Virus record (IMG/VR): IMGVR_UViG_3300021057_000274 | Span: 248,001 to 312,000 of that record | Length of the DNA stretch: 64,000 nt | Strand: one strand, 5' to 3' | In this document: positions 16 to 16,801 of the stretch, piece after piece | Layout of the letters: the number at the start of each line of letters is the position of its first letter | How positions within the stretch are numbered: position 1 is the stretch's first letter | Made by a program: the position numbers and the translations under genes | Notes under the pieces: generated by a model | Database searches by the model: none | What the model was told of the DNA's origin: nothing | Seen by the model: only the letters and a program-made list of their open reading frames with translations

Positions 16-312
16 GTGGTGACGCGTAACGCGAGCTACGAGGCTCCTGGAGCACAGATCGCTTCATCTCTAGATGAAGCGATCAAGCTCTGTAAGGCCG
101 TTGAAGCTCCGATCGCTTGGGTGATCGGTGGACAGCAGCTCTTCAAGGAAGCTCTCGACGTCGCGTCACTGATGAAGATCACCGTGATTCACCAAGACTT
201 TGAGGGTGACGCGTGGTTTCCGGAGTTCAAGCCTTGGATCTGGGAGGAGACGATGCGTGAGTCTTACGGCGGCCCGCTTCAGTTCGACTTCGTGACGTAC
301 GAGCTGCGTTAG
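16..312 (+). CDS. folA: Dihydrofolate reductase, C-terminal part (true start probably upstream of the window)
   Basis: WVIGGQQLFKEAL, ITVIHQDFEGDAWFPEF match the C-terminal half of DHFR. Confidence 0.85.
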   Translation: MVTRNASYEAPGAQIASSLDEAIKLCKAVEAPIAWVIGGQQLFKEALDVASLMKITVIHQDFEGDAWFPEFKPWIWEETMRESYGGPLQFDFVTYELR

Positions 313-9103: not shown

Positions 9104-9110
9104 GCACCAC

Positions 9111-9116
9111 TAAATA
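9111..9116 (+). promoter_or_regulatory. Late promoter, 5 nt before the gp15 start codon
   Basis: TAAATA-ggttc-GTG, no Shine-Dalgarno. Confidence 0.6.
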
Positions 9117-9121
9117 GGTTC

Positions 9122-10555: not shown

Positions 10556-10936
10556 ATGGACCTCCTTCGGGAGCTTACCCAGATCCTCGAGGGTCTTGAG
10601 GATCATAAAAAGTATCCGCTCGTTGATCGGGTCAACGCCGACCTGGTCAACGAGTTTATGCACAAGAAGCCTGCCCGCTGGGCTGACCTTGACAGCTCTG
10701 CCAAGAAGATTCCGCTTGAGCGAGTCAAGGCGATCTTCGGCGGAGATCTTCGCCGTCGCTCCTTTACGATCAAGAGCCTCTGGGGTGAGCGCCCCGAGAG
10801 CCCCTCCTCAGAATTTGTCGACTCTTTTAGAAATTACAAGGAGCCGATCGTGGTCGTAGATGACAAAAAGCACCCCAAGTACGTGATTCACTCCGGTGGC
10901 TTCAATTATCCGCGCTACATGACGGCCGTCAAGTGA
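10556..10936 (+). CDS. Hypothetical, putative capsid-packaged protein
   Basis: Leader MDLLRELTQILEG; RBS GGAGG. Confidence 0.6.
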   Translation: MDLLRELTQILEGLEDHKKYPLVDRVNADLVNEFMHKKPARWADLDSSAKKIPLERVKAIFGGDLRRRSFTIKSLWGERPESPSSEFVDSFRNYKEPIVVVDDKKHPKYVIHSGGFNYPRYMTAVK

Positions 10937-11886
10937 AACTTCTTGAAGAGCTCGTCCTCCTCCTAGAAGAGATCAGCGATCCCTACGTGGTTACGCTGGG
11001 GCGCCCTAAGAACTGGCGCCCGTTCAAGGATACGCCAGCAGGGGCGAACCTCGATGAAGATCCGCACACTTACTTGATGATCAAGACCAAGCAAACCGCT
11101 GGCATTCCCATGGCGGTGATCCGCGATCTGGGACTTAGTTACACAGACGGTGACGGCAAGATCCGGGGGAAGGCGCGCACTCTAGGGGTCGTGAAGGTGT
11201 CAACTCTAGAGGGCAAGGAAGCTGGCAAAAAGAGCCGGTCTGTCGGGTTCTACAGTTGGAAGCCTACCGGATTAGTTTTCTGGTTCAAGAATAAGTCTGA
11301 GAGCGAAGCTAAGGAAGCCATCGAGCAGCTGTTAGAGCCGGTGCTTAAGCGACAGAATAAGTACGTGGCCGCTCGAGAGAGGGCGAGAGAGACCGCGCCA
11401 CGGCGTCGAAAGGAAGCGGCAAAATATTATTCAGAGCGGCGCAAGAAGGAGCTTGAAGAGCTCAAGCAGAAATACGGAGCCGACATCGTGGAGCGAGTAA
11501 AGGTCAAGTCGATGTCCCACGAGGGTGATGACGGGTACCAATGGGCGATGTTCGTCGACGGCCGTCGAGTTCGATCAGGGATGAAGCAAGCCGAAGCTAG
11601 AGCCGCGCAACGCTCACAGTGGAGCTATCTGAAGCGGCTAAAGGAAATGACCCCCGAGGAGCGACTTAGGGAAATCAACGCCGCCCGCGGCCTGCAAGCT
11701 TACTTCATGCTTCAGGCTATGGAGGACGACGTTGATTTGCATCTCGCCGTGATCAAGCAGCACGCGAAAGAGCTAGTTGACGCGAACGACTTAGCCACTG
11801 ATACGATCGAGAACGCAAAGGTTAATGACGAACAGGCGAGGAAGATCTATAACGACCTCATCGCTAAGCTTAGGAAGAAGACATGA
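10933..11886 (+). CDS. Hypothetical basic protein, putative capsid-packaged
   Basis: Leader MKLLEELVLLLEE. Confidence 0.6.
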   Translation: MKLLEELVLLLEEISDPYVVTLGRPKNWRPFKDTPAGANLDEDPHTYLMIKTKQTAGIPMAVIRDLGLSYTDGDGKIRGKARTLGVVKVSTLEGKEAGKKSRSVGFYSWKPTGLVFWFKNKSESEAKEAIEQLLEPVLKRQNKYVAARERARETAPRRRKEAAKYYSERRKKELEELKQKYGADIVERVKVKSMSHEGDDGYQWAMFVDGRRVRSGMKQAEARAAQRSQWSYLKRLKEMTPEERLREINAARGLQAYFMLQAMEDDVDLHLAVIKQHAKELVDANDLATDTIENAKVNDEQARKIYNDLIAKLRKKT

Positions 11887-12224
11887 TCATCGTAGAACTG
11901 CTCGCCATCCTCGAGGCTAAGATCGATCCGAAGAAGTGGCCTGAGCTCAAGGCCTACTGGGACAAGTACGGCCACGGCACCAAGTTCGAAGACCTCGACG
12001 GTATCAAGGTACGAAGTGACGGCAACTACGTCGTCGTGCGCTGGAAGGAGGAGGGCGGCAAGGTAGGACTCGCCGACCTAGCGAAGTACACCGGAGGTCC
12101 GTGGGAGATGCAGAACGACAGCTTCGACGAGATCACCGAGGGTGACTGGCGGAAGCTGAAGATCGTTCCAGACTGCGACTGGTTCACGATTCCCGGCCAC
12201 CCCGACTACGACGAGGAAGAGTAA
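11883..12224 (+). CDS. Hypothetical, putative capsid-packaged protein
   Basis: Leader MIIVELLAILEA. Confidence 0.6.
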   Translation: MIIVELLAILEAKIDPKKWPELKAYWDKYGHGTKFEDLDGIKVRSDGNYVVVRWKEEGGKVGLADLAKYTGGPWEMQNDSFDEITEGDWRKLKIVPDCDWFTIPGHPDYDEEE

Positions 12225-12253
12225 GAAGCCTTGCACCACCAGGTCAGCTAGGC

Positions 12254-12259
12254 TAAATA
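12254..12259 (+). promoter_or_regulatory. Late promoter
   Basis: TAAATA in intergenic gap before 12306. Confidence 0.6.
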
Positions 12260-12305
12260 GGTAACCACCTCCGCGGTAGACGCGGTTAGCACGGGAAAGC
12301 TCAAG

Positions 12306-13328
12306 ATGGCGTTGGAACTTCTACTAGAATTGCTGGATTCGACCAGCGAGAAGTCTCCTGAGATTCAGGAGATGGCGCCATTCATCCACGCCATCGCGAG
12401 ACTCTTGTTCGGTACTAAGGCTCGCGCCGTCAAGGACTCTAAGCGCGGCAAGGAAGCCAAGTTCTTCGGGGTCGCTCACGAGCGAAGCCGGATCAAGGAC
12501 CCGAAGGGAAAGCCGCTGATGCTCACCTTCGATAACAGCACCGACTCCGGCGAGTTCGAGATCAACTCGCTACTCAAGCTCGATATCGAAAAGGACGGCG
12601 ACATCGACCTGGAGATCAAGAAGCTCTTCAAGGAGTTTCAGGTCAAGTCCAAGAAGAAGATGAACTACGTCATGCAGGGCGACCGCTACGTTCTGCGCGA
12701 GATCCACCTGGGCAAAGAGATCAACGAGCTCACCGTCGCGATGGTCGAGAAGCTCCTCAAGTTGCTCAGCAACAAACCCGAGAAGGTCGAGGAAGCCATG
12801 ACCTCTGGCGAAATTGTTGAGTTTATCAAGAAAGAGACAAGAGAAACTCAAAACTCAGATCATCCGGCTGGCGATCGCGCTTACGCAAGGGCGATCGACG
12901 ATGTCATCAAGAAGGCTAGCAAAGCTGATTTAAAGTTTGCGCAAGAACAGCTAAATGCTGCGATTAAAGAGGGCAGCTTCGGAACCGACACCCTCACCCC
13001 AGCTGCTGCAGGTAAAGTTTGGGGTAAGTTTGCTGGATGGCGCGCTGCCGTAAAGTTTCTCGGAGGTAAGCTTCCCAAGGACGTAGAAAGCGCATCGTAC
13101 CTCGACGATCTTTGGGACATCAAGCCGGGAAGGGTCGAGGAAGCGATGACGAAGAGCTTCATCACAGAGGCTGACTTCAACTTGATTCTTGACTGGTTCT
13201 CGTCGACGTCTGGCGGCCCGCAGATGGCTGACTACGCGGACAAGATCAAAGAGCGGATGCCAGGCGTGCAGCCTTGGACCTGGAAGCAAAATAAGCACTC
13301 TCTCATCAAGAAGCTCTCCAAGAAATAA
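12306..13328 (+). CDS. Modular putative capsid cargo with repeated KPxxVEEAMT linkers
   Basis: Leader MALELLLELL; VEEAMT occurs twice. Confidence 0.6.
   Translation: MALELLLELLDSTSEKSPEIQEMAPFIHAIARLLFGTKARAVKDSKRGKEAKFFGVAHERSRIKDPKGKPLMLTFDNSTDSGEFEINSLLKLDIEKDGDIDLEIKKLFKEFQVKSKKKMNYVMQGDRYVLREIHLGKEINELTVAMVEKLLKLLSNKPEKVEEAMTSGEIVEFIKKETRETQNSDHPAGDRAYARAIDDVIKKASKADLKFAQEQLNAAIKEGSFGTDTLTPAAAGKVWGKFAGWRAAVKFLGGKLPKDVESASYLDDLWDIKPGRVEEAMTKSFITEADFNLILDWFSSTSGGPQMADYADKIKERMPGVQPWTWKQNKHSLIKKLSKK
12785..13150 (+). repeat. 18-bp near-perfect direct repeat flanking a 348-nt in-frame cassette
   Basis: GGTCGAGGAAGCCATGAC at 12785-12802 and GGTCGAGGAAGCGATGAC at 13133-13150. Confidence 0.8.
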
Positions 13329-14551
13329 TGGCGGTCAAGCAATCCGACGTCCCGCAGATCGCTCAGCAGGTCGGCGTCGACCTCTCGAGGTCGAGCGCTG
13401 AGAGCGCGTCTAACCTGACCGCGCAGATCGCCGCCTGGAACGACCAGAACGCCAGCCCGGGTGACATCCTCGCGGCGACCCGCGGGATCCCGGGCACGGT
13501 CGGCGGGATTCCGGGGATCGGTAGCTCGATCCCCCAGATCGGCCGAATTCCGCTCCCGACCGCCGAGATCCCGAACATCTTGGGGCCGCTCAACCAGATC
13601 AACCTCGGCGTCGCTGGAACATGGGAGGCGACCCACTACGCGAACGATCTCAACGCCCACCACCCGAAGTTTAAGTTTCTCTTTAAGGTCGAGTTCCAGG
13701 GCTTCACGGCGAAGAACTTCTACCGGTATGTCCATCGCATCGACAAGCCCAAGGTGCGCTTCAACCACCAGGACATGAACTATTACAACTTTCGGACTCG
13801 CGTCTTGACCCACATGACGTTCGAGCCCCTCGCGATCACGTTTCTCGACGAGATCGGCAACAGCGTCAACAACTTCTTCGCCACCTACATGGCCGAGCGC
13901 TCGGGGCAGGGCGAGGGCCACGCCGACACTGACGCTGGTTTGGGCAAGGCTACCTCGACGAAGTCTTATCCCAACGGATATTCAGCCGGTCGTAAGATCA
14001 TCGTCGAGCAGATCTTTGCGAACGGCACTCACTCGAACTGGTTCACCTTCATCAACCCCCGCATCGAGGCGTTTGACTTCGATGAGCTGAACATGGAGGA
14101 CAGCCTGGGCTCGCTGCTCACGGTGATGTTCTCCTATGACGCGTTGACCTGTGACACCCACGAGCGATCGCGACTTTACGGCTGGGGTGAGACTGACCTG
14201 CTCAAGGGCGGCGACTATCCCGGCAAGAACGCGGGCGACGAGAGCGGCATGTATCGAGCTGGAGCCATCTCCGCGACGGGGAAGCCGACAGGCCGAGAGG
14301 TTAAGCCACCGACGACCTCGTCGAACTACGCGGCGCCTGACCTCGGGGAGTATCCTGACGAGGCCACGCAATCCGCGGCGCTAGAGGGACTAACCGCGCC
14401 GACGTACGAGGGGCCAAATCCAGAGGGGGCGCCAGCCTGGGTTTCAGAGAACTCCACCGATACGATCATCAATCGTAACGTCCAAGAGACCTTTACCTCA
14501 GTTCGCTCCGGGCTTAACCTCAATCCCCTGCTAGGCATCACCGTCAAATAG
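13328..14551 (+). CDS. Baseplate tail-tube-fold protein (gp48/gp54-like)
   Basis: PKFKFLFKVEF...IDKPKVRF...YNFRTRV...FEPLAITFLDE...LTVMFSYD tube fold. Confidence 0.7.
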   Translation: MAVKQSDVPQIAQQVGVDLSRSSAESASNLTAQIAAWNDQNASPGDILAATRGIPGTVGGIPGIGSSIPQIGRIPLPTAEIPNILGPLNQINLGVAGTWEATHYANDLNAHHPKFKFLFKVEFQGFTAKNFYRYVHRIDKPKVRFNHQDMNYYNFRTRVLTHMTFEPLAITFLDEIGNSVNNFFATYMAERSGQGEGHADTDAGLGKATSTKSYPNGYSAGRKIIVEQIFANGTHSNWFTFINPRIEAFDFDELNMEDSLGSLLTVMFSYDALTCDTHERSRLYGWGETDLLKGGDYPGKNAGDESGMYRAGAISATGKPTGREVKPPTTSSNYAAPDLGEYPDEATQSAALEGLTAPTYEGPNPEGAPAWVSENSTDTIINRNVQETFTSVRSGLNLNPLLGITVK

Positions 14552-14583: not shown

Positions 14584-15090
14584 ATGGCTAAAGGAATCTA
14601 CACTCCAGAAAATCCAGCGAAGTATCACGGTGACGCACGCGCGTGTAAAGAATGCGGCTTCACCTTCAAGTCAGTAATGAGTCTTGCTCGTCACTTGACT
14701 CAAAAGCATGCAATAACTTGTCAAGCATACTGGGATAAGCACTTTCTGATTACGAATTGTATTGAATGTGGAAAACCAACCAAGTTCAAAGGCATTGGCA
14801 AAGGGTATGCTAAGGTATGCTCACATGTTTGTGGCGGGGTTAACTTTAGAAAGCAATTGAGAGCTGATCCTTACAAACAAGAGCAGTTTGCACGGCGAGT
14901 TTCATCTAATCAAAAAGCAATTTGGAGTCAACGTTCAGACAGCGAGAAGAAAGCTATTTTTGAGAAGATAGCCTATACTTCATTTAGATCTAAAATCGTT
15001 AATCGCCCAACAACGATCGTGTTTGACGACGCATGGTGGAAGTTACAAGCTCGTGTGTCACGAAATCTTGACGAGGTGTTCTTTGACTAA
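14584..15090 (+). CDS. AT-rich zinc-finger protein starting with a copy of the gp4 N-terminal motif; possible homing-endonuclease remnant
   Basis: MAKGIYTPENPAKYHGD, then CxxC-x12-H-x4-H and CIECG...CSHVC; clearly more AT-rich than flanks; TAAATA at 14573-14578. Confidence 0.55.
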   Translation: MAKGIYTPENPAKYHGDARACKECGFTFKSVMSLARHLTQKHAITCQAYWDKHFLITNCIECGKPTKFKGIGKGYAKVCSHVCGGVNFRKQLRADPYKQEQFARRVSSNQKAIWSQRSDSEKKAIFEKIAYTSFRSKIVNRPTTIVFDDAWWKLQARVSRNLDEVFFD

Positions 15091-15547
15091 TTTAGGAAAA
15101 AAGTCCAGGAACAGGGGAACGGCAAAGGGATTATTTAGACCTACCAATCCCCACAAATATCTGGGGGATCCATGCAAAATTCGCTTTCTCTCGAATTGGG
15201 AGCGCTTTTTCATGCAGTGGTGTGACCGAAACCCGAACATTCTCAGGTGGGGATCGGAGGAGTTTCGCATCCCCTACTTTCACCCTGTCAAGCAGAAGAT
15301 CTGCAACTACATTCCGGACTTCATCATCAAGTATCGGGACAAGGATGACCGCATCATCACCGAGATCCTCGAGGTGAAGCCGGCCAAGGAGGCCGTTCTC
15401 AACCTCCCGGGACGCAAGAAGATCTCGACCTACGACCAGGTTCAGCTGGCGATCAACAACGCAAAGTGGAAGGCCGCTAAGGAGTTCTGTGAGTCACACG
15501 GCATCAAGTTTCGTGTTCTCACCGAGCACCAGCTCTTTAGAAAATGA
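15083..15547 (+). CDS. gp4: Head completion nuclease gp4
   Basis: KGLFRPTNPHKYLGDP...SNWERFFMQWCDRNPNILRWGSEE...YIPDF...EVKP; probable TTG start 15083 after GAGGTG. Confidence 0.88.
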   Translation: MTNLGKKSRNRGTAKGLFRPTNPHKYLGDPCKIRFLSNWERFFMQWCDRNPNILRWGSEEFRIPYFHPVKQKICNYIPDFIIKYRDKDDRIITEILEVKPAKEAVLNLPGRKKISTYDQVQLAINNAKWKAAKEFCESHGIKFRVLTEHQLFRK

Positions 15548-16107
15548 CCAACAACTCAGATAACTCGCACGTTCTCAACGATCTCTTCAACGTCGGTGCC
15601 GCTCCGCCTCCTAAGGAGATCCAAGCGATCACCGACCCTGGCATCACGACCGCCCTCGTCCGTCCGTCGACCGGTGAGCGAGTCATCAGGCCTGAGGCTC
15701 CGCCAGCGGAAGAGGTGATCGCGGGTGAGGAGCGACTTGAGGATCTCGCGATCGACTCGAAGCTAGAACGGGTCCACGAGTCCGCGATCGAGGCTTACAA
15801 GTCACAGTTTAAGCTCTCTCAAGAGGTCGAGTCTCGCTTCTCAGCTAGAAACGCTGAGGTAGCCGCCCAGTACTTGAAGATCGCGCTCGACTCGGTCAGC
15901 CTGCGGGTTGACTCGAAGTTCAAGCGAAACAAGATCAAGCTCGCGCAGGAGAAGAAGGAGGAGGGGGCGAAGGGAAGGGGCACGATCCTCGTCGCGGACC
16001 GCAACGAGGTGCTTCGGGTCCTCAGTCAGGCGCTCCAGCAGAGCTCGCCGGCGGAGAAGACCGTCGAGGGTGAGGTGCTACCGGAGATGAAGAGTGAGGC
16101 TGAATGA
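15544..16107 (+). CDS. Probable terminase small subunit
   Basis: Helical protein between gp4 and terL; AEVAAQYLKIALD...ILVADRNEVLRVL pattern of jumbo-phage TerS. Confidence 0.6.
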   Translation: MTNNSDNSHVLNDLFNVGAAPPPKEIQAITDPGITTALVRPSTGERVIRPEAPPAEEVIAGEERLEDLAIDSKLERVHESAIEAYKSQFKLSQEVESRFSARNAEVAAQYLKIALDSVSLRVDSKFKRNKIKLAQEKKEEGAKGRGTILVADRNEVLRVLSQALQQSSPAEKTVEGEVLPEMKSEAE

Positions 16108-16801
16108 GCTCGTCGGAGTCAAGAAGCTCCAAAACTTTCGGACGGATGAGCTCGTCGACTTTCTAGATCTCTACACGCCCTACAAGCAATCTGGACGGGG
16201 TAATTTTTCGAGGGTCTTCGAGAAGGACGGAGAGATCTACAAGTTCTGGGCGCTTGACCCAGCTTATGAGCGCTTTGTCAAATATTGTTTGGCAAACAAG
16301 GGCAATAAGCATCTGCCGAGATTCTTATCTGACGTCAAGACCTTGACGGCGTTTCACACTAGGCACCGTGATCACCCGAGAAAGCTCAAGTACGTCAAGA
16401 TGGAGATCCTCGAGCCGTCTGAGATAAAGGACGCGTTCTTCAAGACCATTAACGATTACCTGTTCGGGCGTCCTCGTCGAGTGAGCGCCGACATCTTGAG
16501 GACTCGTGAAGAGGTATATCAAGAGTACGAGAAGCTTTACGGTAACAAGTATCAGAGCTTTCTTGAGACGGTTCTAGACGTGTGCGACCACGTGCGAAAG
16601 GGAGCTTCGTCGACCTTCTACCCCGACATCAGATCGGTAAACGTGATGGAGCGCGACGGGGTGCTAGTCCTCACGGATCCTGGGTATGACGAGAGGGAGA
16701 CGTACGACTGGGGAGACATCACTAGCCTCGAGGTTAGAAATCCCGACGAGCGAGTGAGCGGTCCGAAGCGTGACAAGAAAACTTTCAAGGGTACTCCATG
16801 A
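16094..16801 (+). CDS. Protein-kinase-like fold protein with cargo leader
   Basis: Gly loop GRGNFSRVF, IYKF, HLPRF, MEIL, catalytic PDIRSVNVM and VLTDP. Confidence 0.65.
   Translation: MRLNELVGVKKLQNFRTDELVDFLDLYTPYKQSGRGNFSRVFEKDGEIYKFWALDPAYERFVKYCLANKGNKHLPRFLSDVKTLTAFHTRHRDHPRKLKYVKMEILEPSEIKDAFFKTINDYLFGRPRRVSADILRTREEVYQEYEKLYGNKYQSFLETVLDVCDHVRKGASSTFYPDIRSVNVMERDGVLVLTDPGYDERETYDWGDITSLEVRNPDERVSGPKRDKKTFKGTP

What the first reader, a model, noticed from the sequence alone, without database searches (positions are those of the whole stretch)
12306..13328. Cassette-built polyprotein with repeated protease-site-like linkers
Seen: KPEKVEEAMT and KPGRVEEAMT split the protein into three modules. 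At DNA level an 18-bp repeat (17/18 identical) flanks a 348-nt, visibly more AT-rich middle module. Each repeat contains an in-frame ATG right after EEA. Known: gp21-type proteases cut after Glu. Inference: cargo domains are chained behind one leader, released by the prohead protease, and swapped by recombination at the linker.
Basis: partly seen in the sequence, partly recalled or inferred. Interest (0 to 1): 0.6.

Follow-up and report, generated by a model that had tools for sequence, protein, structure and literature searches.

The report
Phage internal protein carrying swappable cargo
A giant T4-like soil phage encodes a probably head-packaged protein made of three unrelated modules joined by two near-identical linkers that look like prohead-protease cut sites, and relatives show that such modules are swapped like cassettes; cutting itself is untested.

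Summary
ORF 12306-13328 (340 aa) has KPEKVEEAMT and KPGRVEEAMT 116 codons apart, a match no shuffle reached (0/300). The middle module has GC3 0.44-0.51 against about 0.80 on either side.

The host is a 389-kb T4-like jumbo myovirus with a gp21-type protease. About 25 of its genes, this ORF's three upstream neighbours included, start with a short leader resembling the T4 capsid targeting sequence. This ORF has a variant of that leader.

Module 1 is a basic domain with no Pfam or PHROG hit. It is conserved in 33 distinct metagenomic relatives, always behind such a leader. Their C-terminal parts vary combinatorially: none, A', A'-B, A-B, B, X-Y, C, D, or 2-3 here. Nearly every junction carries [LIV]-x-E-[A/G/S].

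Modules 2 and 3 occur elsewhere as stand-alone small genes, or directly behind a leader. AlphaFold models fold the modules separately and leave the linkers disordered.

The cassette architecture and the foreign origin of module 2 are therefore well supported. Head packaging and cutting at VEE|A are inferred from motifs only. An in-frame Shine-Dalgarno-like site plus ATG at both linkers is a live rival. I rate this a new variant of CTS-tagged internal proteins, of moderate interest.

The parts
12253..12261 (+). CTAAATAGG motif 45 nt upstream of the start codon; candidate late-promoter-like element
   Evidence: It occurs twice in the window (also at 9110, before gp15), against 0.07 expected. Of 18 CTAAATA sites in the genome, 13 lie within 120 nt upstream of a start. 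These include the scaffold, gp13-like and gp15 genes and 5 leader-tagged genes. A promoter role is inferred.
12306..13328 (+). The ORF: 340 aa, 38.3 kDa. Its stop overlaps the ATG of the next gene, a tail-tube paralog at 13328-14551.
   Evidence: It is identical in contigs of two soil metagenome runs.
12306..12338 (+). N-terminal leader, aa 1-11 (acidic and Leu-rich, ending LLE8-LLD11): a variant of the CTS-like leader
   Evidence: A related leader sits on the three upstream genes (10556, 10933, 11883). By regex it is found on 25 of 543 N-termini against 12 of 2209 internal Met (p 2.5e-10). This ORF itself is not caught by that regex. Family members carry leaders such as MTTFKEFLAE (L017), compared with the T4 CTS MKTYQEFIAE (PMC8442874).
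12339..12770 (+). Module 1, aa 12-155: conserved basic alpha/beta domain (pI 9.3) with an invariant FDNSTDSGEFE core
   Evidence: All 21 word-search homologs and 14 IMG/VR loci match this part only. AF2 pLDDT is above 90 over about aa 20-155. There is no Pfam or PHROG hit. GC3 of aa 1-163 is 0.83.
12774..12803 (+). Linker 1, KPEKVEEAMT: predicted cut VEE163|A164; in-frame ATG165 preceded by GAGGAA
   Evidence: pLDDT is below 50 at aa 158-163. The DNA repeat copy is 12770-12802.
12795..13142 (+). Module 2, aa 164-279: four-helix bundle cassette of foreign composition (GC3 0.51; 0.44 over aa 167-263)
   Evidence: The homologs are: P0023 (118 aa, stand-alone); L009:2463-2843 and P0030 (leader plus module); and P0027 (leader, another domain, then the module). 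The AF2 model with alignment A3 gives pLDDT about 90.
13122..13151 (+). Linker 2, KPGRVEEAMT: predicted cut VEE279|A280; in-frame ATG281 preceded by GAGGAA
   Evidence: pLDDT is below 50 at model residues 110-120, which are aa 273-283. The DNA repeat copy is 13118-13150.
13143..13325 (+). Module 3, aa 280-340: small basic helical cassette with a conserved PGV-PWTW motif
   Evidence: P0024, P0026 and P0029 are stand-alone homologs that begin MTE. P0028, P0031 and P0032 are a leader plus this module. GC3 is 0.79. pLDDT is about 80-85.
10556..12224 (+). Three upstream genes (10556-10936, 10933-11886, 11883-12224), each with the same type of leader ending I/L-L-E|G/E/A
   Evidence: None has a Pfam or PHROG hit.

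Best explanation
The gene encodes a capsid-targeted internal protein of a T4-like jumbo phage that serves as a carrier for two extra cargo cassettes.

Proposed steps:
1. A short acidic, Leu-rich N-terminal leader, of the same type as the T4 capsid targeting sequence, takes the protein into the scaffolding core of the prohead.
2. Module 1 (basic, conserved, about 16-18 kDa) is the family's own internal-protein domain.
3. Two unrelated small domains follow: module 2 (12.6 kDa four-helix bundle) and module 3 (7 kDa). Each sits behind a disordered linker ending V-E-E|A.
4. The phage's gp21-type prohead protease cuts after these Glu residues. The head then holds three separate polypeptides, which leave with the DNA at infection.
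5. The cassettes are exchangeable. Module 2 came recently from a lower-GC phage, by recombination at or next to the linker, which is now present twice.

Shown: the repeat; the modular and combinatorial architecture; the autonomy of modules 2 and 3; the foreign codon usage of module 2; disordered linkers in the models; the presence of the protease; and enrichment of the leader at N-termini.

Inferred: packaging into the head, cleavage at the linkers, ejection, and the recombination mechanism. The function of the cargo is unknown.
For: Genome context:
- The genome is a 389-kb T4-like myovirus. It has a portal, a gp21-type protease (PF03420, 1e-29; 37% identical to T4 gp21, with the GELNHP and GVSSRG blocks kept), a scaffold-like gene next to them and a major capsid protein.
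- The capsid protein has a YLTE|T site upstream of the conserved RRxIP block, where T4 has FLTE|A.

The leader:
- It is enriched at N-termini: 25 of 543 against 12 of 2209 internal Met.
- Thirteen of the 25 lie in the 238-267 kb structural block. One lies between the protease and the scaffold-like gene.
- Leaders end [LI]-x-E|[AGS].
- Family member L017 starts MTTFKEFLAE, compared with the T4 CTS MKTYQEFIAE (PMC8442874).

T4 precedent (PMC9026906):
- gp21 cuts after L/I-X-E, and the first bond identified was Glu-Ala.
- Fusions to the C-terminus of IPIII are packaged and delivered.

The family:
- 33 distinct members share the leader plus basic module 1, with pI 9.1-9.6 in the 22 computed.
- Their tails are combinatorial: N, N-A', N-A'-B, N-A-B, N-B, N-X-Y, N-C, N-D and N-2-3.

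Junction motif:
- [LIV]xE[AGS] occurs 31 times in cassette-bearing tails, against 8.8 +/- 2.9 in shuffles.
- It occurs 0 times in tails under 60 aa, which lack cassettes, although many of these are E-rich.
- In alignment A3, every module-2 or module-3 homolog with an N-terminal extension has a hydrophobic-x-E (ALNE|A, KLNE|E, ELFE|A, KLQE|S, FITE|S) where this ORF has VEE|A.

Other points:
- Linkers are disordered and modules are folded in the AF2 models.
- Module 2 has GC3 0.44-0.51 against 0.80.
Against: - There is no proteomic or biochemical evidence. No cultured phage carries module 1.
- P3 is Val, not the classical Leu or Ile of T4. The motif is short, and other L-x-E and I-x-E sites sit inside the folded module 1 (LRE132, INE141).
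- This ORF's own leader ends LLD11. In T4, Asp at the cut position blocks processing though not targeting (PMC9026906), so the leader may stay on.
- P0003's second junction has Leu where this ORF has the P1 Glu (IELAM).
- The gene always sits between the tail-tube gene and a tube paralog, which would also fit a tail role.
- Relatives are not independent, so the motif enrichment is inflated.
- No relative differs only by module 2. The only two runs holding the locus show one form.
- The complex prediction for protease plus linker gave no answer.
Confidence: 0.5

Rival explanations
1. Uncut multidomain fusion. Three formerly separate small genes were fused in frame and the protein works intact. 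The linkers are flexible spacers, and their similarity reflects a duplicated junction rather than a protease site.
For: Modules 2 and 3 exist as separate genes elsewhere. The linkers are disordered. V at P3 departs from the T4 motif (PMC9026906). P0003's second junction lacks the Glu.
Against: The same hydrophobic-x-E-[AGS] motif recurs at almost every junction in a family spanning 36-58% GC, but not in E-rich tails without cassettes. It aligns with the ends of N-terminal leaders in leader-tagged homologs.
Confidence: 0.2
2. Nested genes by internal translation initiation. The repeated 18 nt is a ribosome-binding site plus start codon (GAGGAA, 3 nt, ATG). Leaderless products of modules 2+3 (176 aa) and module 3 (60 aa) would be made in the cytoplasm, in addition to or instead of proteolytic release.
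For: Both linkers have GAGGAAGC[C/G]ATG, with GAGG ending 5 nt before the ATG. Both use GAA for the second Glu, although GAA is only 16.8% of Glu codons. P0003's first junction reads AAGGAGGGGATG. Stand-alone homologs begin MT- at about the same place. T4 itself has annotated in-frame internal starts in genes 17 and 21.
Against: Only about a third of this phage's genes have a Shine-Dalgarno core, and 10.7% of internal ATGs have one by chance. The low-GC clade has no Met at its junctions but keeps the x-E-A motif. In module 3 the stand-alone start aligns 5 residues after the linker's Met. This rival does not exclude cleavage.
Confidence: 0.15
3. Tail-associated protein. The conserved module 1 acts in tail-tube assembly or sits in the tail, and the variable C-terminal domains are decorations. 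The leader is not a capsid signal.
For: Synteny is strict in six contexts: gp15, tube (198 aa), 0-3 small genes, this gene, then a tube paralog of 404-485 aa. The stop and the next start often overlap.
Against: The same leader is carried by genes scattered through the structural block, one next to the protease and scaffold-like genes. It resembles the T4 CTS. Basic small proteins are typical of T4 internal proteins (PMC9026906). No tail family hit was found, and the fold matches are weak.
Confidence: 0.1
4. Chance repeat in a low-complexity, Glu/Lys-rich protein with no functional meaning.
For: The protein is rich in K and E.
Against: None of 300 shuffles reached 8/10. The boundaries coincide with homology boundaries, disorder in the models and the GC3 change-points.
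Confidence: 0.01

Closest known systems
T4 internal proteins IPI, IPII, IPIII and Alt with the capsid targeting sequence (Mullaney & Black 1996; reviewed in PMC9026906 and PMC3012670)
   Same: A short N-terminal leader is shared by otherwise unrelated, mostly small basic proteins of one phage. The leader ends in a hydrophobic-x-Glu site. A gp21-type protease is present. The cargo set is highly variable between related phages.
   Different: No sequence homology to the IPs was found. Here one conserved carrier domain is followed by a chain of extra domains, each behind its own Glu-Ala linker. T4 IPs are single-domain proteins cut once. Packaging and cleavage are not shown here.
[quoted passage not shown]
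   Same: The architecture is leader, internal protein, then foreign protein at the C-terminus. In T4 such fusions are packaged and delivered into the host.
   Different: Those fusions are man-made. This one would be a natural counterpart, with protease-type linkers between carrier and cargo.
Polyvalent proteins of phages and conjugative elements (Iyer et al. 2017, PMC5512222)
   Same: Several unrelated, shuffled domains sit in one polypeptide, encoded among late or structural genes. They are proposed to be packaged, injected and sometimes cut into separate effectors. Solo versions of the domains exist elsewhere.
   Different: This protein is much smaller (340 aa, 3 domains). It has none of the catalogued conflict domains and no peptidase domain of its own. 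Release would depend on the prohead protease acting in trans.
Multi-site processing of head and ejection proteins in phiKZ, 201phi2-1 and SPN3US (PMC5694885, PMC10052503)
   Same: A gp21-related protease cuts after Glu at a three-residue motif in many head proteins, some at several sites. N-terminal propeptides act in targeting.
   Different: The motif there is A/S/G-x-E. Those proteins are not described as cassettes joined by repeated linkers. The phage lineage is different.
In-frame internal translation starts in T4 genes 17 and 21 (T4 annotation; PMC9026906)
   Same: An in-frame ATG preceded by a Shine-Dalgarno-like sequence lies inside a late gene.
   Different: Here the sites coincide with domain boundaries and with a protease-type motif. 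No expression data exist.

Membership tests
CTS-tagged internal head proteins (T4 IP/Alt type) | A short N-terminal leader shared by otherwise unrelated proteins of the same phage | tested here: met
   By regex, 25 of 543 N-termini against 12 of 2209 internal Met carry it. The three upstream genes and all family members have it. This ORF has a variant (MALELLLELLD) that the regex does not catch.
CTS-tagged internal head proteins (T4 IP/Alt type) | The leader ends in the protease motif (L/I-x-E) and is removed | tested here: inconclusive
   Neighbours end ILE|G, LLE|E and ILE|A. This ORF has LLE8 and then LLD11, and Asp blocks processing in T4 (PMC9026906). Removal cannot be tested with these tools.
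CTS-tagged internal head proteins (T4 IP/Alt type) | The genome encodes a gp21-type prohead protease | tested here: met
   PF03420 at 1e-29; phrog_207 at 1e-61; 37% identity to T4 gp21 with the GELNHP and GVSSRG blocks kept.
CTS-tagged internal head proteins (T4 IP/Alt type) | The protein is physically present inside the head and is ejected | not testable with these tools
   No proteome exists for this phage. No cultured phage carries module 1.
CTS-tagged internal head proteins (T4 IP/Alt type) | Sequence homology to T4 IPI, IPII, IPIII or Alt | tested here: not met
   tblastn of the whole ORF and of module 1 against 50,697 phage records, T4 included, gave no match. There is no Pfam or PHROG hit. 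The resemblance is in design, not in descent.
Polyvalent proteins (Iyer et al. 2017) | Two or more unrelated, independently occurring domains in one phage-encoded polypeptide in a late-gene context | tested here: met
   There are three modules with no mutual similarity. Solo versions of modules 2 and 3 occur elsewhere. The gene lies in the structural block.
Polyvalent proteins (Iyer et al. 2017) | Contains catalogued conflict or effector domains, often with an internal peptidase (MPTase) | tested here: not met
   No Pfam hit for any module down to E = 1. Fold searches were uninformative.
Protease-processed polyprotein | The cognate protease motif recurs at domain boundaries in accessible linkers | tested here: met
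   VEE|A occurs twice, in segments with pLDDT below 50. The family-wide junction motif is enriched and aligns with leader ends.
Protease-processed polyprotein | Cleavage products observed | not testable with these tools
   No proteomic data exist. The complex prediction gave no answer.
Nested genes with internal in-frame starts | An in-frame start codon with a ribosome-binding site at proper spacing, conserved among relatives | tested here: inconclusive
   GAGGAA-N3-ATG occurs at both linkers, and AAGGAGGGG-ATG in P0003. The low-GC clade has no Met at its junctions. The background rate of SD-like internal ATGs is 10.7%.

The most novel reading that the evidence does not exclude
A clade of T4-like jumbo phages uses a conserved basic internal protein as a natural carrier. 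Small cargo domains also circulate among phages of 23-58% GC as solo or leader-tagged genes. In these phages they are plugged in behind the carrier through standardised linkers that the prohead protease can cut. One targeting leader would then load several separate proteins into the head for injection. This would be a natural counterpart of the engineered T4 expression-packaging-processing system, and a minimal, trans-processed form of polyvalent protein.
Probability: 0.4. Interest if true: 0.7.

Novelty: new variant of a known kind. Interest (0 to 1): 0.55.

Why it matters
**What it would show.** If the cuts are real, phages would not only tag single proteins for head packaging, as T4 does. 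They would also chain exchangeable cargo behind one carrier and let the maturation protease separate the pieces.

**What it opens up.**
- It gives a simple sequence rule (leader, carrier, hydrophobic-x-Glu-Ala linker) for finding injected proteins in uncultured jumbo phages. These proteins are the likely early counter-defence or host-takeover factors.
- It offers natural linker and carrier parts for packaging foreign proteins in phage heads.

**What stands even without cleavage.** The locus is a clean case of in-frame acquisition of a foreign domain, with the junction sequence duplicated. The basic module-1 family is conserved and has no annotation.

Tried and rejected
**Searches that gave nothing useful**
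- Pfam and PHROGs found nothing for the ORF or its separate modules. The only hits (BPS1 at E 0.005, TrkH at E 0.36) are below cut-off and were rejected.
- blastn and tblastn against 50,697 phage records gave no match for the locus, the ORF or module 1.
- The word search with module 2 alone found nothing. The exhaustive HMMER search was needed.
- The ESM Atlas feature search gave no usable hit. The PD-(D/E)XK-like and NucS-like structural neighbours (TM about 0.5) rest on the Atlas's own poor model, so I did not adopt them.

**Fold searches**
- Foldseek against PDB and BFVD had no hit at E <= 0.001.
- For module 1, VIA gave a best Z of 6.0 (T4 MotA C-terminal domain). Type III secretion chaperones scored about Z 4.
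- For module 2, the best Z was 6.0, to unrelated helical proteins.
- The Atlas shape search stayed below TM 0.4.
- All of these are below the level the tool notes call meaningful. No fold assignment is made.

**Other tests**
- The complex prediction for protease plus linker gave no answer, so it is neither for nor against.
- Laying contigs of the two soil runs that hold the locus showed one identical three-module form and no deletion variant. Contigs drop rare variants, and these runs may be the source of the record.
- The closest cultured relative, RsoM2USA (capsid protein 55% identical), lacks the family and the synteny. It does have similar leaders.

**Rejected ideas**
- Whole-module tandem duplication: there is no similarity between the modules.
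- Intein or intron: the frame is continuous and no hallmark residues are present.
- Overlapping antisense gene as the cause of low GC3: only the spurious antisense frames usual in GC-rich DNA are seen.
Full report
**1. The observation**

The ORF at 12306-13328 (+) encodes 340 aa.
- KPEKVEEAMT occupies aa 157-166 and KPGRVEEAMT aa 273-282.
- At the DNA level the 18-nt cores at 12785 and 13133 are 17/18 identical and 348 nt apart. The repeat finder extends them to 33 nt at 79% identity.
- A pair of 10-mers with 8 identities was never reached in 300 shuffles of the protein.
- Apart from the linkers, the three parts share no similarity.
- The middle part is only slightly lower in total GC. Its third-position GC is 0.51 against 0.83 and 0.79.
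- An unbiased change-point scan places a segment with GC3 0.44 at aa 167-263..270, against 0.80 outside.
- Only 2.1% of equally long coding windows in the genome are as low.

**2. Where it lies**

- The window is bases 248001-312000 of a 389,331-bp IMG/VR virus record. The locus was found in soil metagenome runs.
- The record is a T4-like jumbo myovirus. Just upstream lie a portal, a gp21-type protease, a scaffold-like gene, the major capsid protein and the tail sheath. The scaffold label rests on position and composition only; its one PHROG hit has no function assigned.
- In the window lie gp13-like, gp15, tail tube, a long tube paralog, gp4 and the large terminase.
- The protease is 37% identical to T4 gp21 and keeps the GELNHP and GVSSRG blocks.
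- The capsid protein has YLTE|T upstream of the conserved RRxIP block, where T4 has FLTE|A. That this is the maturation site is my inference from T4.
- The closest cultured phages are Ralstonia RsoM2USA and Xanthomonas XacN1, with capsid protein 55% and 52% identical.

**3. The leader**

- The three genes upstream of the ORF start with M-x-L-L-x-E-L...[IL]-L-E followed by G, E or A. The ORF itself has a variant of this.
- A loose pattern for this leader matches 25 of 543 predicted N-termini, but only 12 of 2209 internal Met positions (odds ratio 8.8, p 2.5e-10).
- Thirteen of the 25 lie in the 238-267 kb structural block. One lies between the protease and the scaffold-like gene.
- RsoM2USA has similar leaders, for example MTTFKEYLLEG. 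So do small genes on contigs of 23-47% GC (L009, L010, L012, L013).
- One member of the module-1 family starts MTTFKEFLAE (L017). That shares 6 of 10 residues with the T4 capsid targeting sequence MKTYQEFIAE (PMC8442874).

What is known for T4 (PMC9026906; PMC3012670):
- The first 10 residues of the internal proteins target them to the prohead core.
- gp21 cuts after L/I-X-E, and the first bond identified was Glu-Ala.
- Asp at the cut position blocks processing but not targeting.
- Proteins fused to the C-terminus of IPIII are packaged and delivered.
- The internal proteins of T-even phages are diverse, with only the leader conserved.

**4. The family and its cassettes**

- The word search found 21 relatives. 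All match aa 1 to about 155 only. Their lengths run from 187 to 387 aa.
- An IMG/VR scan added 14 loci. Together these make 33 distinct sequences.
- Module 1 has an invariant FDNSTDSGEFE core. It is basic in every one of the 22 members computed, with pI 9.1-9.6.
- It is modelled with pLDDT above 90 as an alpha/beta domain.
- It has no Pfam, PHROG or convincing fold match.
- Synteny is constant in six contexts: gp15, tube (198 aa), 0-3 small genes, this gene, then the tube paralog.

Behind module 1 the proteins differ. BLAST among the tails gives these architectures:

| Architecture | Members |
|---|---|
| Short acidic or Pro/Glu/Lys-rich tail only | many |
| A' | P0004 |
| A'-B | P0005, P0009 |
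| A-B | P0012, P0015, P0017, P0020 |
| B | P0016, L025 |
| X-Y | P0003 |
| C | P0021 |
| D | P0010 |
| 2-3 | this ORF |

**5. Modules 2 and 3 are autonomous**

The exhaustive HMMER search with aa 164-340 found 10 further proteins. One, a 2903-aa repeat protein, I set aside.
- Module 2 occurs as a stand-alone 118-aa protein (P0023). It also occurs directly behind a leader (P0030, and the gene next to P0023, which is L009:2463-2843). In P0027 it follows a leader and another domain.
- Module 3 occurs as stand-alone proteins of 52-93 aa that begin MTE (P0024, P0026, P0029). It also occurs behind leaders (P0028, P0031, P0032).
- With these sequences as an alignment, AlphaFold models module 2 as a confident four-helix bundle and module 3 as a small helical domain.
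- Residues 273-283, which are the second linker, fall below pLDDT 50. The first linker is likewise disordered.
- No fold match was informative, so the cargo function is unknown.

**6. The linkers as cut sites**

- In alignment A3, every homolog with an N-terminal extension has a hydrophobic-x-Glu immediately before the domain. The sites are ALNE|A, KLNE|E, ELFE|A, KLQE|S and FITE|S. This ORF has VEE|A at the same alignment place.
- Within the module-1 family the junctions read VKE|A, LSE|A, LTE|G, LNE|A, LDE|A, LKE|G and LKE|A.
- [LIV]xE[AGS] occurs 31 times in the 15 tails of 60 aa or more, against 8.8 +/- 2.9 in shuffles. No shuffle of 500 reached 31.
- It never occurs in the tails under 60 aa, which carry no cassette, although many of these are Glu-rich.
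- The sequences are related, so this count is not a probability. The contrast is still consistent.
- P0016 (N-B) keeps both VKEA and LSEA side by side, where N-A-B proteins have cassette A between them.

Against the cut-site reading:
- P3 is Val here rather than Leu or Ile.
- P0003's second junction has Leu in place of the P1 Glu.
- L-x-E motifs also lie inside the folded module 1.
- This ORF's own leader ends in Asp.
- No cleavage data exist.
- A complex prediction for the protease with the linker gave no answer.

**7. The origin of module 2**

- The low-GC3 segment coincides with the homology-defined module.
- Its relatives come from contigs of 24-47% GC.
- The linker is present on both sides, with the same GAG-GAA codon pair, although GAA is only 16.8% of Glu codons in this genome.
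- I infer an in-frame acquisition by recombination at or next to the linker, with the linker duplicated.
- No close relative with an N-3 architecture was found. The two runs that hold the locus carry the same form.

**8. Rivals**

- *Internal translation starts.* Both linkers read GAGGAAGC[C/G]ATG, a Shine-Dalgarno-like core 5 nt before an in-frame ATG. P0003's first junction reads AAGGAGGGGATG. T4 has such nested starts in genes 17 and 21. However, only a third of this phage's genes have such a core, and 10.7% of internal ATGs have one by chance. The low-GC clade also has no Met at its junctions. This may act alongside cleavage.
- *An uncut fusion.* It fits the architecture but not the recurrence of the motif.
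- *A tail role.* It fits the synteny but not the distribution of the leader or its likeness to the T4 CTS.

**9. Verdict**

The cassette architecture is well supported, as are the autonomy of the modules and the foreign origin of module 2. Head targeting is a reasonable inference. Cleavage at VEE|A is plausible but untested.

The closest known things are:
- the CTS-tagged internal proteins of T4;
- their engineered IPIII-cargo fusions;
- the polyvalent proteins of Iyer et al. (PMC5512222);
- the multi-site processing of head proteins in phiKZ-like phages (PMC5694885).

The ORF is not homologous to any of them. In design, it is a new variant of a known kind.

Noticed in passing
window 14584-15090 (+) and 15023-15547 (+): A 168-aa ORF has the lowest GC3 in the window (0.39) and weak C2H2 zinc-finger hits. 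It starts with AKGIYTPENPAKYHGD, a copy of the conserved N-terminus of the gp4-like head-closure gene just downstream (AKGLFRPTNPHKYLGD; 32/60 nt identical). The gp4-like frame has no Met at the conserved position, and its first 60 or so codons are also low in GC3. This looks like a mobile, homing-endonuclease-like insertion with a duplicated or co-converted flank. It would be a second case in this locus of foreign DNA flanked by a repeated piece of host coding sequence.
   Followed up: partly
window 9110-9118 and 12253-12261; genome-wide in G000: The CTAAATA(GG) motif occurs 18 times in the genome, and 13 of these lie within 120 nt upstream of a start. Many are only 8-13 nt before the ATG. 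The genes include the scaffold-like, gp13-like and gp15 genes, this ORF and five leader-tagged genes. It resembles the T4 late promoter TATAAATA.
   Followed up: partly
G000 238216-238869 (L002:10216-10869), 244875-245708 (L002:16875-17708), window 16094-16801: Other leader-tagged genes carry recognisable or suggestive cargo. One has a phosphoribosyltransferase domain (Pfam 2.8e-10). One has a T7 gp0.7-like kinase PHROG hit (6e-7). A 217-aa protein between the protease and the scaffold-like gene has a GNHR motif that reminded me of ParB-type nucleases, but it has no family hit.
   Followed up: partly
window 3790, 4416, 6918, 10556, 10933, 11883, 16094, 18575, 45351(-), 50627, 59744 (gene starts): About 25 genes of the 389-kb genome share the M-K/R-L-x-E/D-L-L...E leader. 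Thirteen of them lie in the 238-267 kb structural block. They form a candidate catalogue of head-packaged proteins.
   Followed up: partly
L009 2077-2433 and 2463-2843; L010 1004-1770: In another phage, two paralogs of module 2 sit side by side, one without and one with the leader (MILKELLALNE|A...). Both the tagged and the untagged form of one cargo can therefore coexist.
   Followed up: no
L014 (Ralstonia phage RsoM2USA 162710-175408): The closest cultured relative has a block of genes with T4-CTS-like starts (gp254 MTTFKEYLLEG, gp255, gp256, gp258) downstream of its gp4-like gene. ORF257, in that block, is reported as an abundant virion band (PMC8504454).
   Followed up: partly
window 13328-14551 (+), especially 13360-13600: The long tail-tube paralog has an N-terminal extension of about 100 aa. 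It is very GC-rich (0.69-0.72) and has repeated IPG/IGxIP motifs, which echo the IGIPGIG at the start of the 198-aa tube protein.
   Followed up: no
G000 as a whole: IMG/VR classes this 389-kb T4-like record as a provirus, 98% complete by CheckV. The gene content seen here is that of a lytic T4-like jumbo phage, so the label looks doubtful.
   Followed up: no
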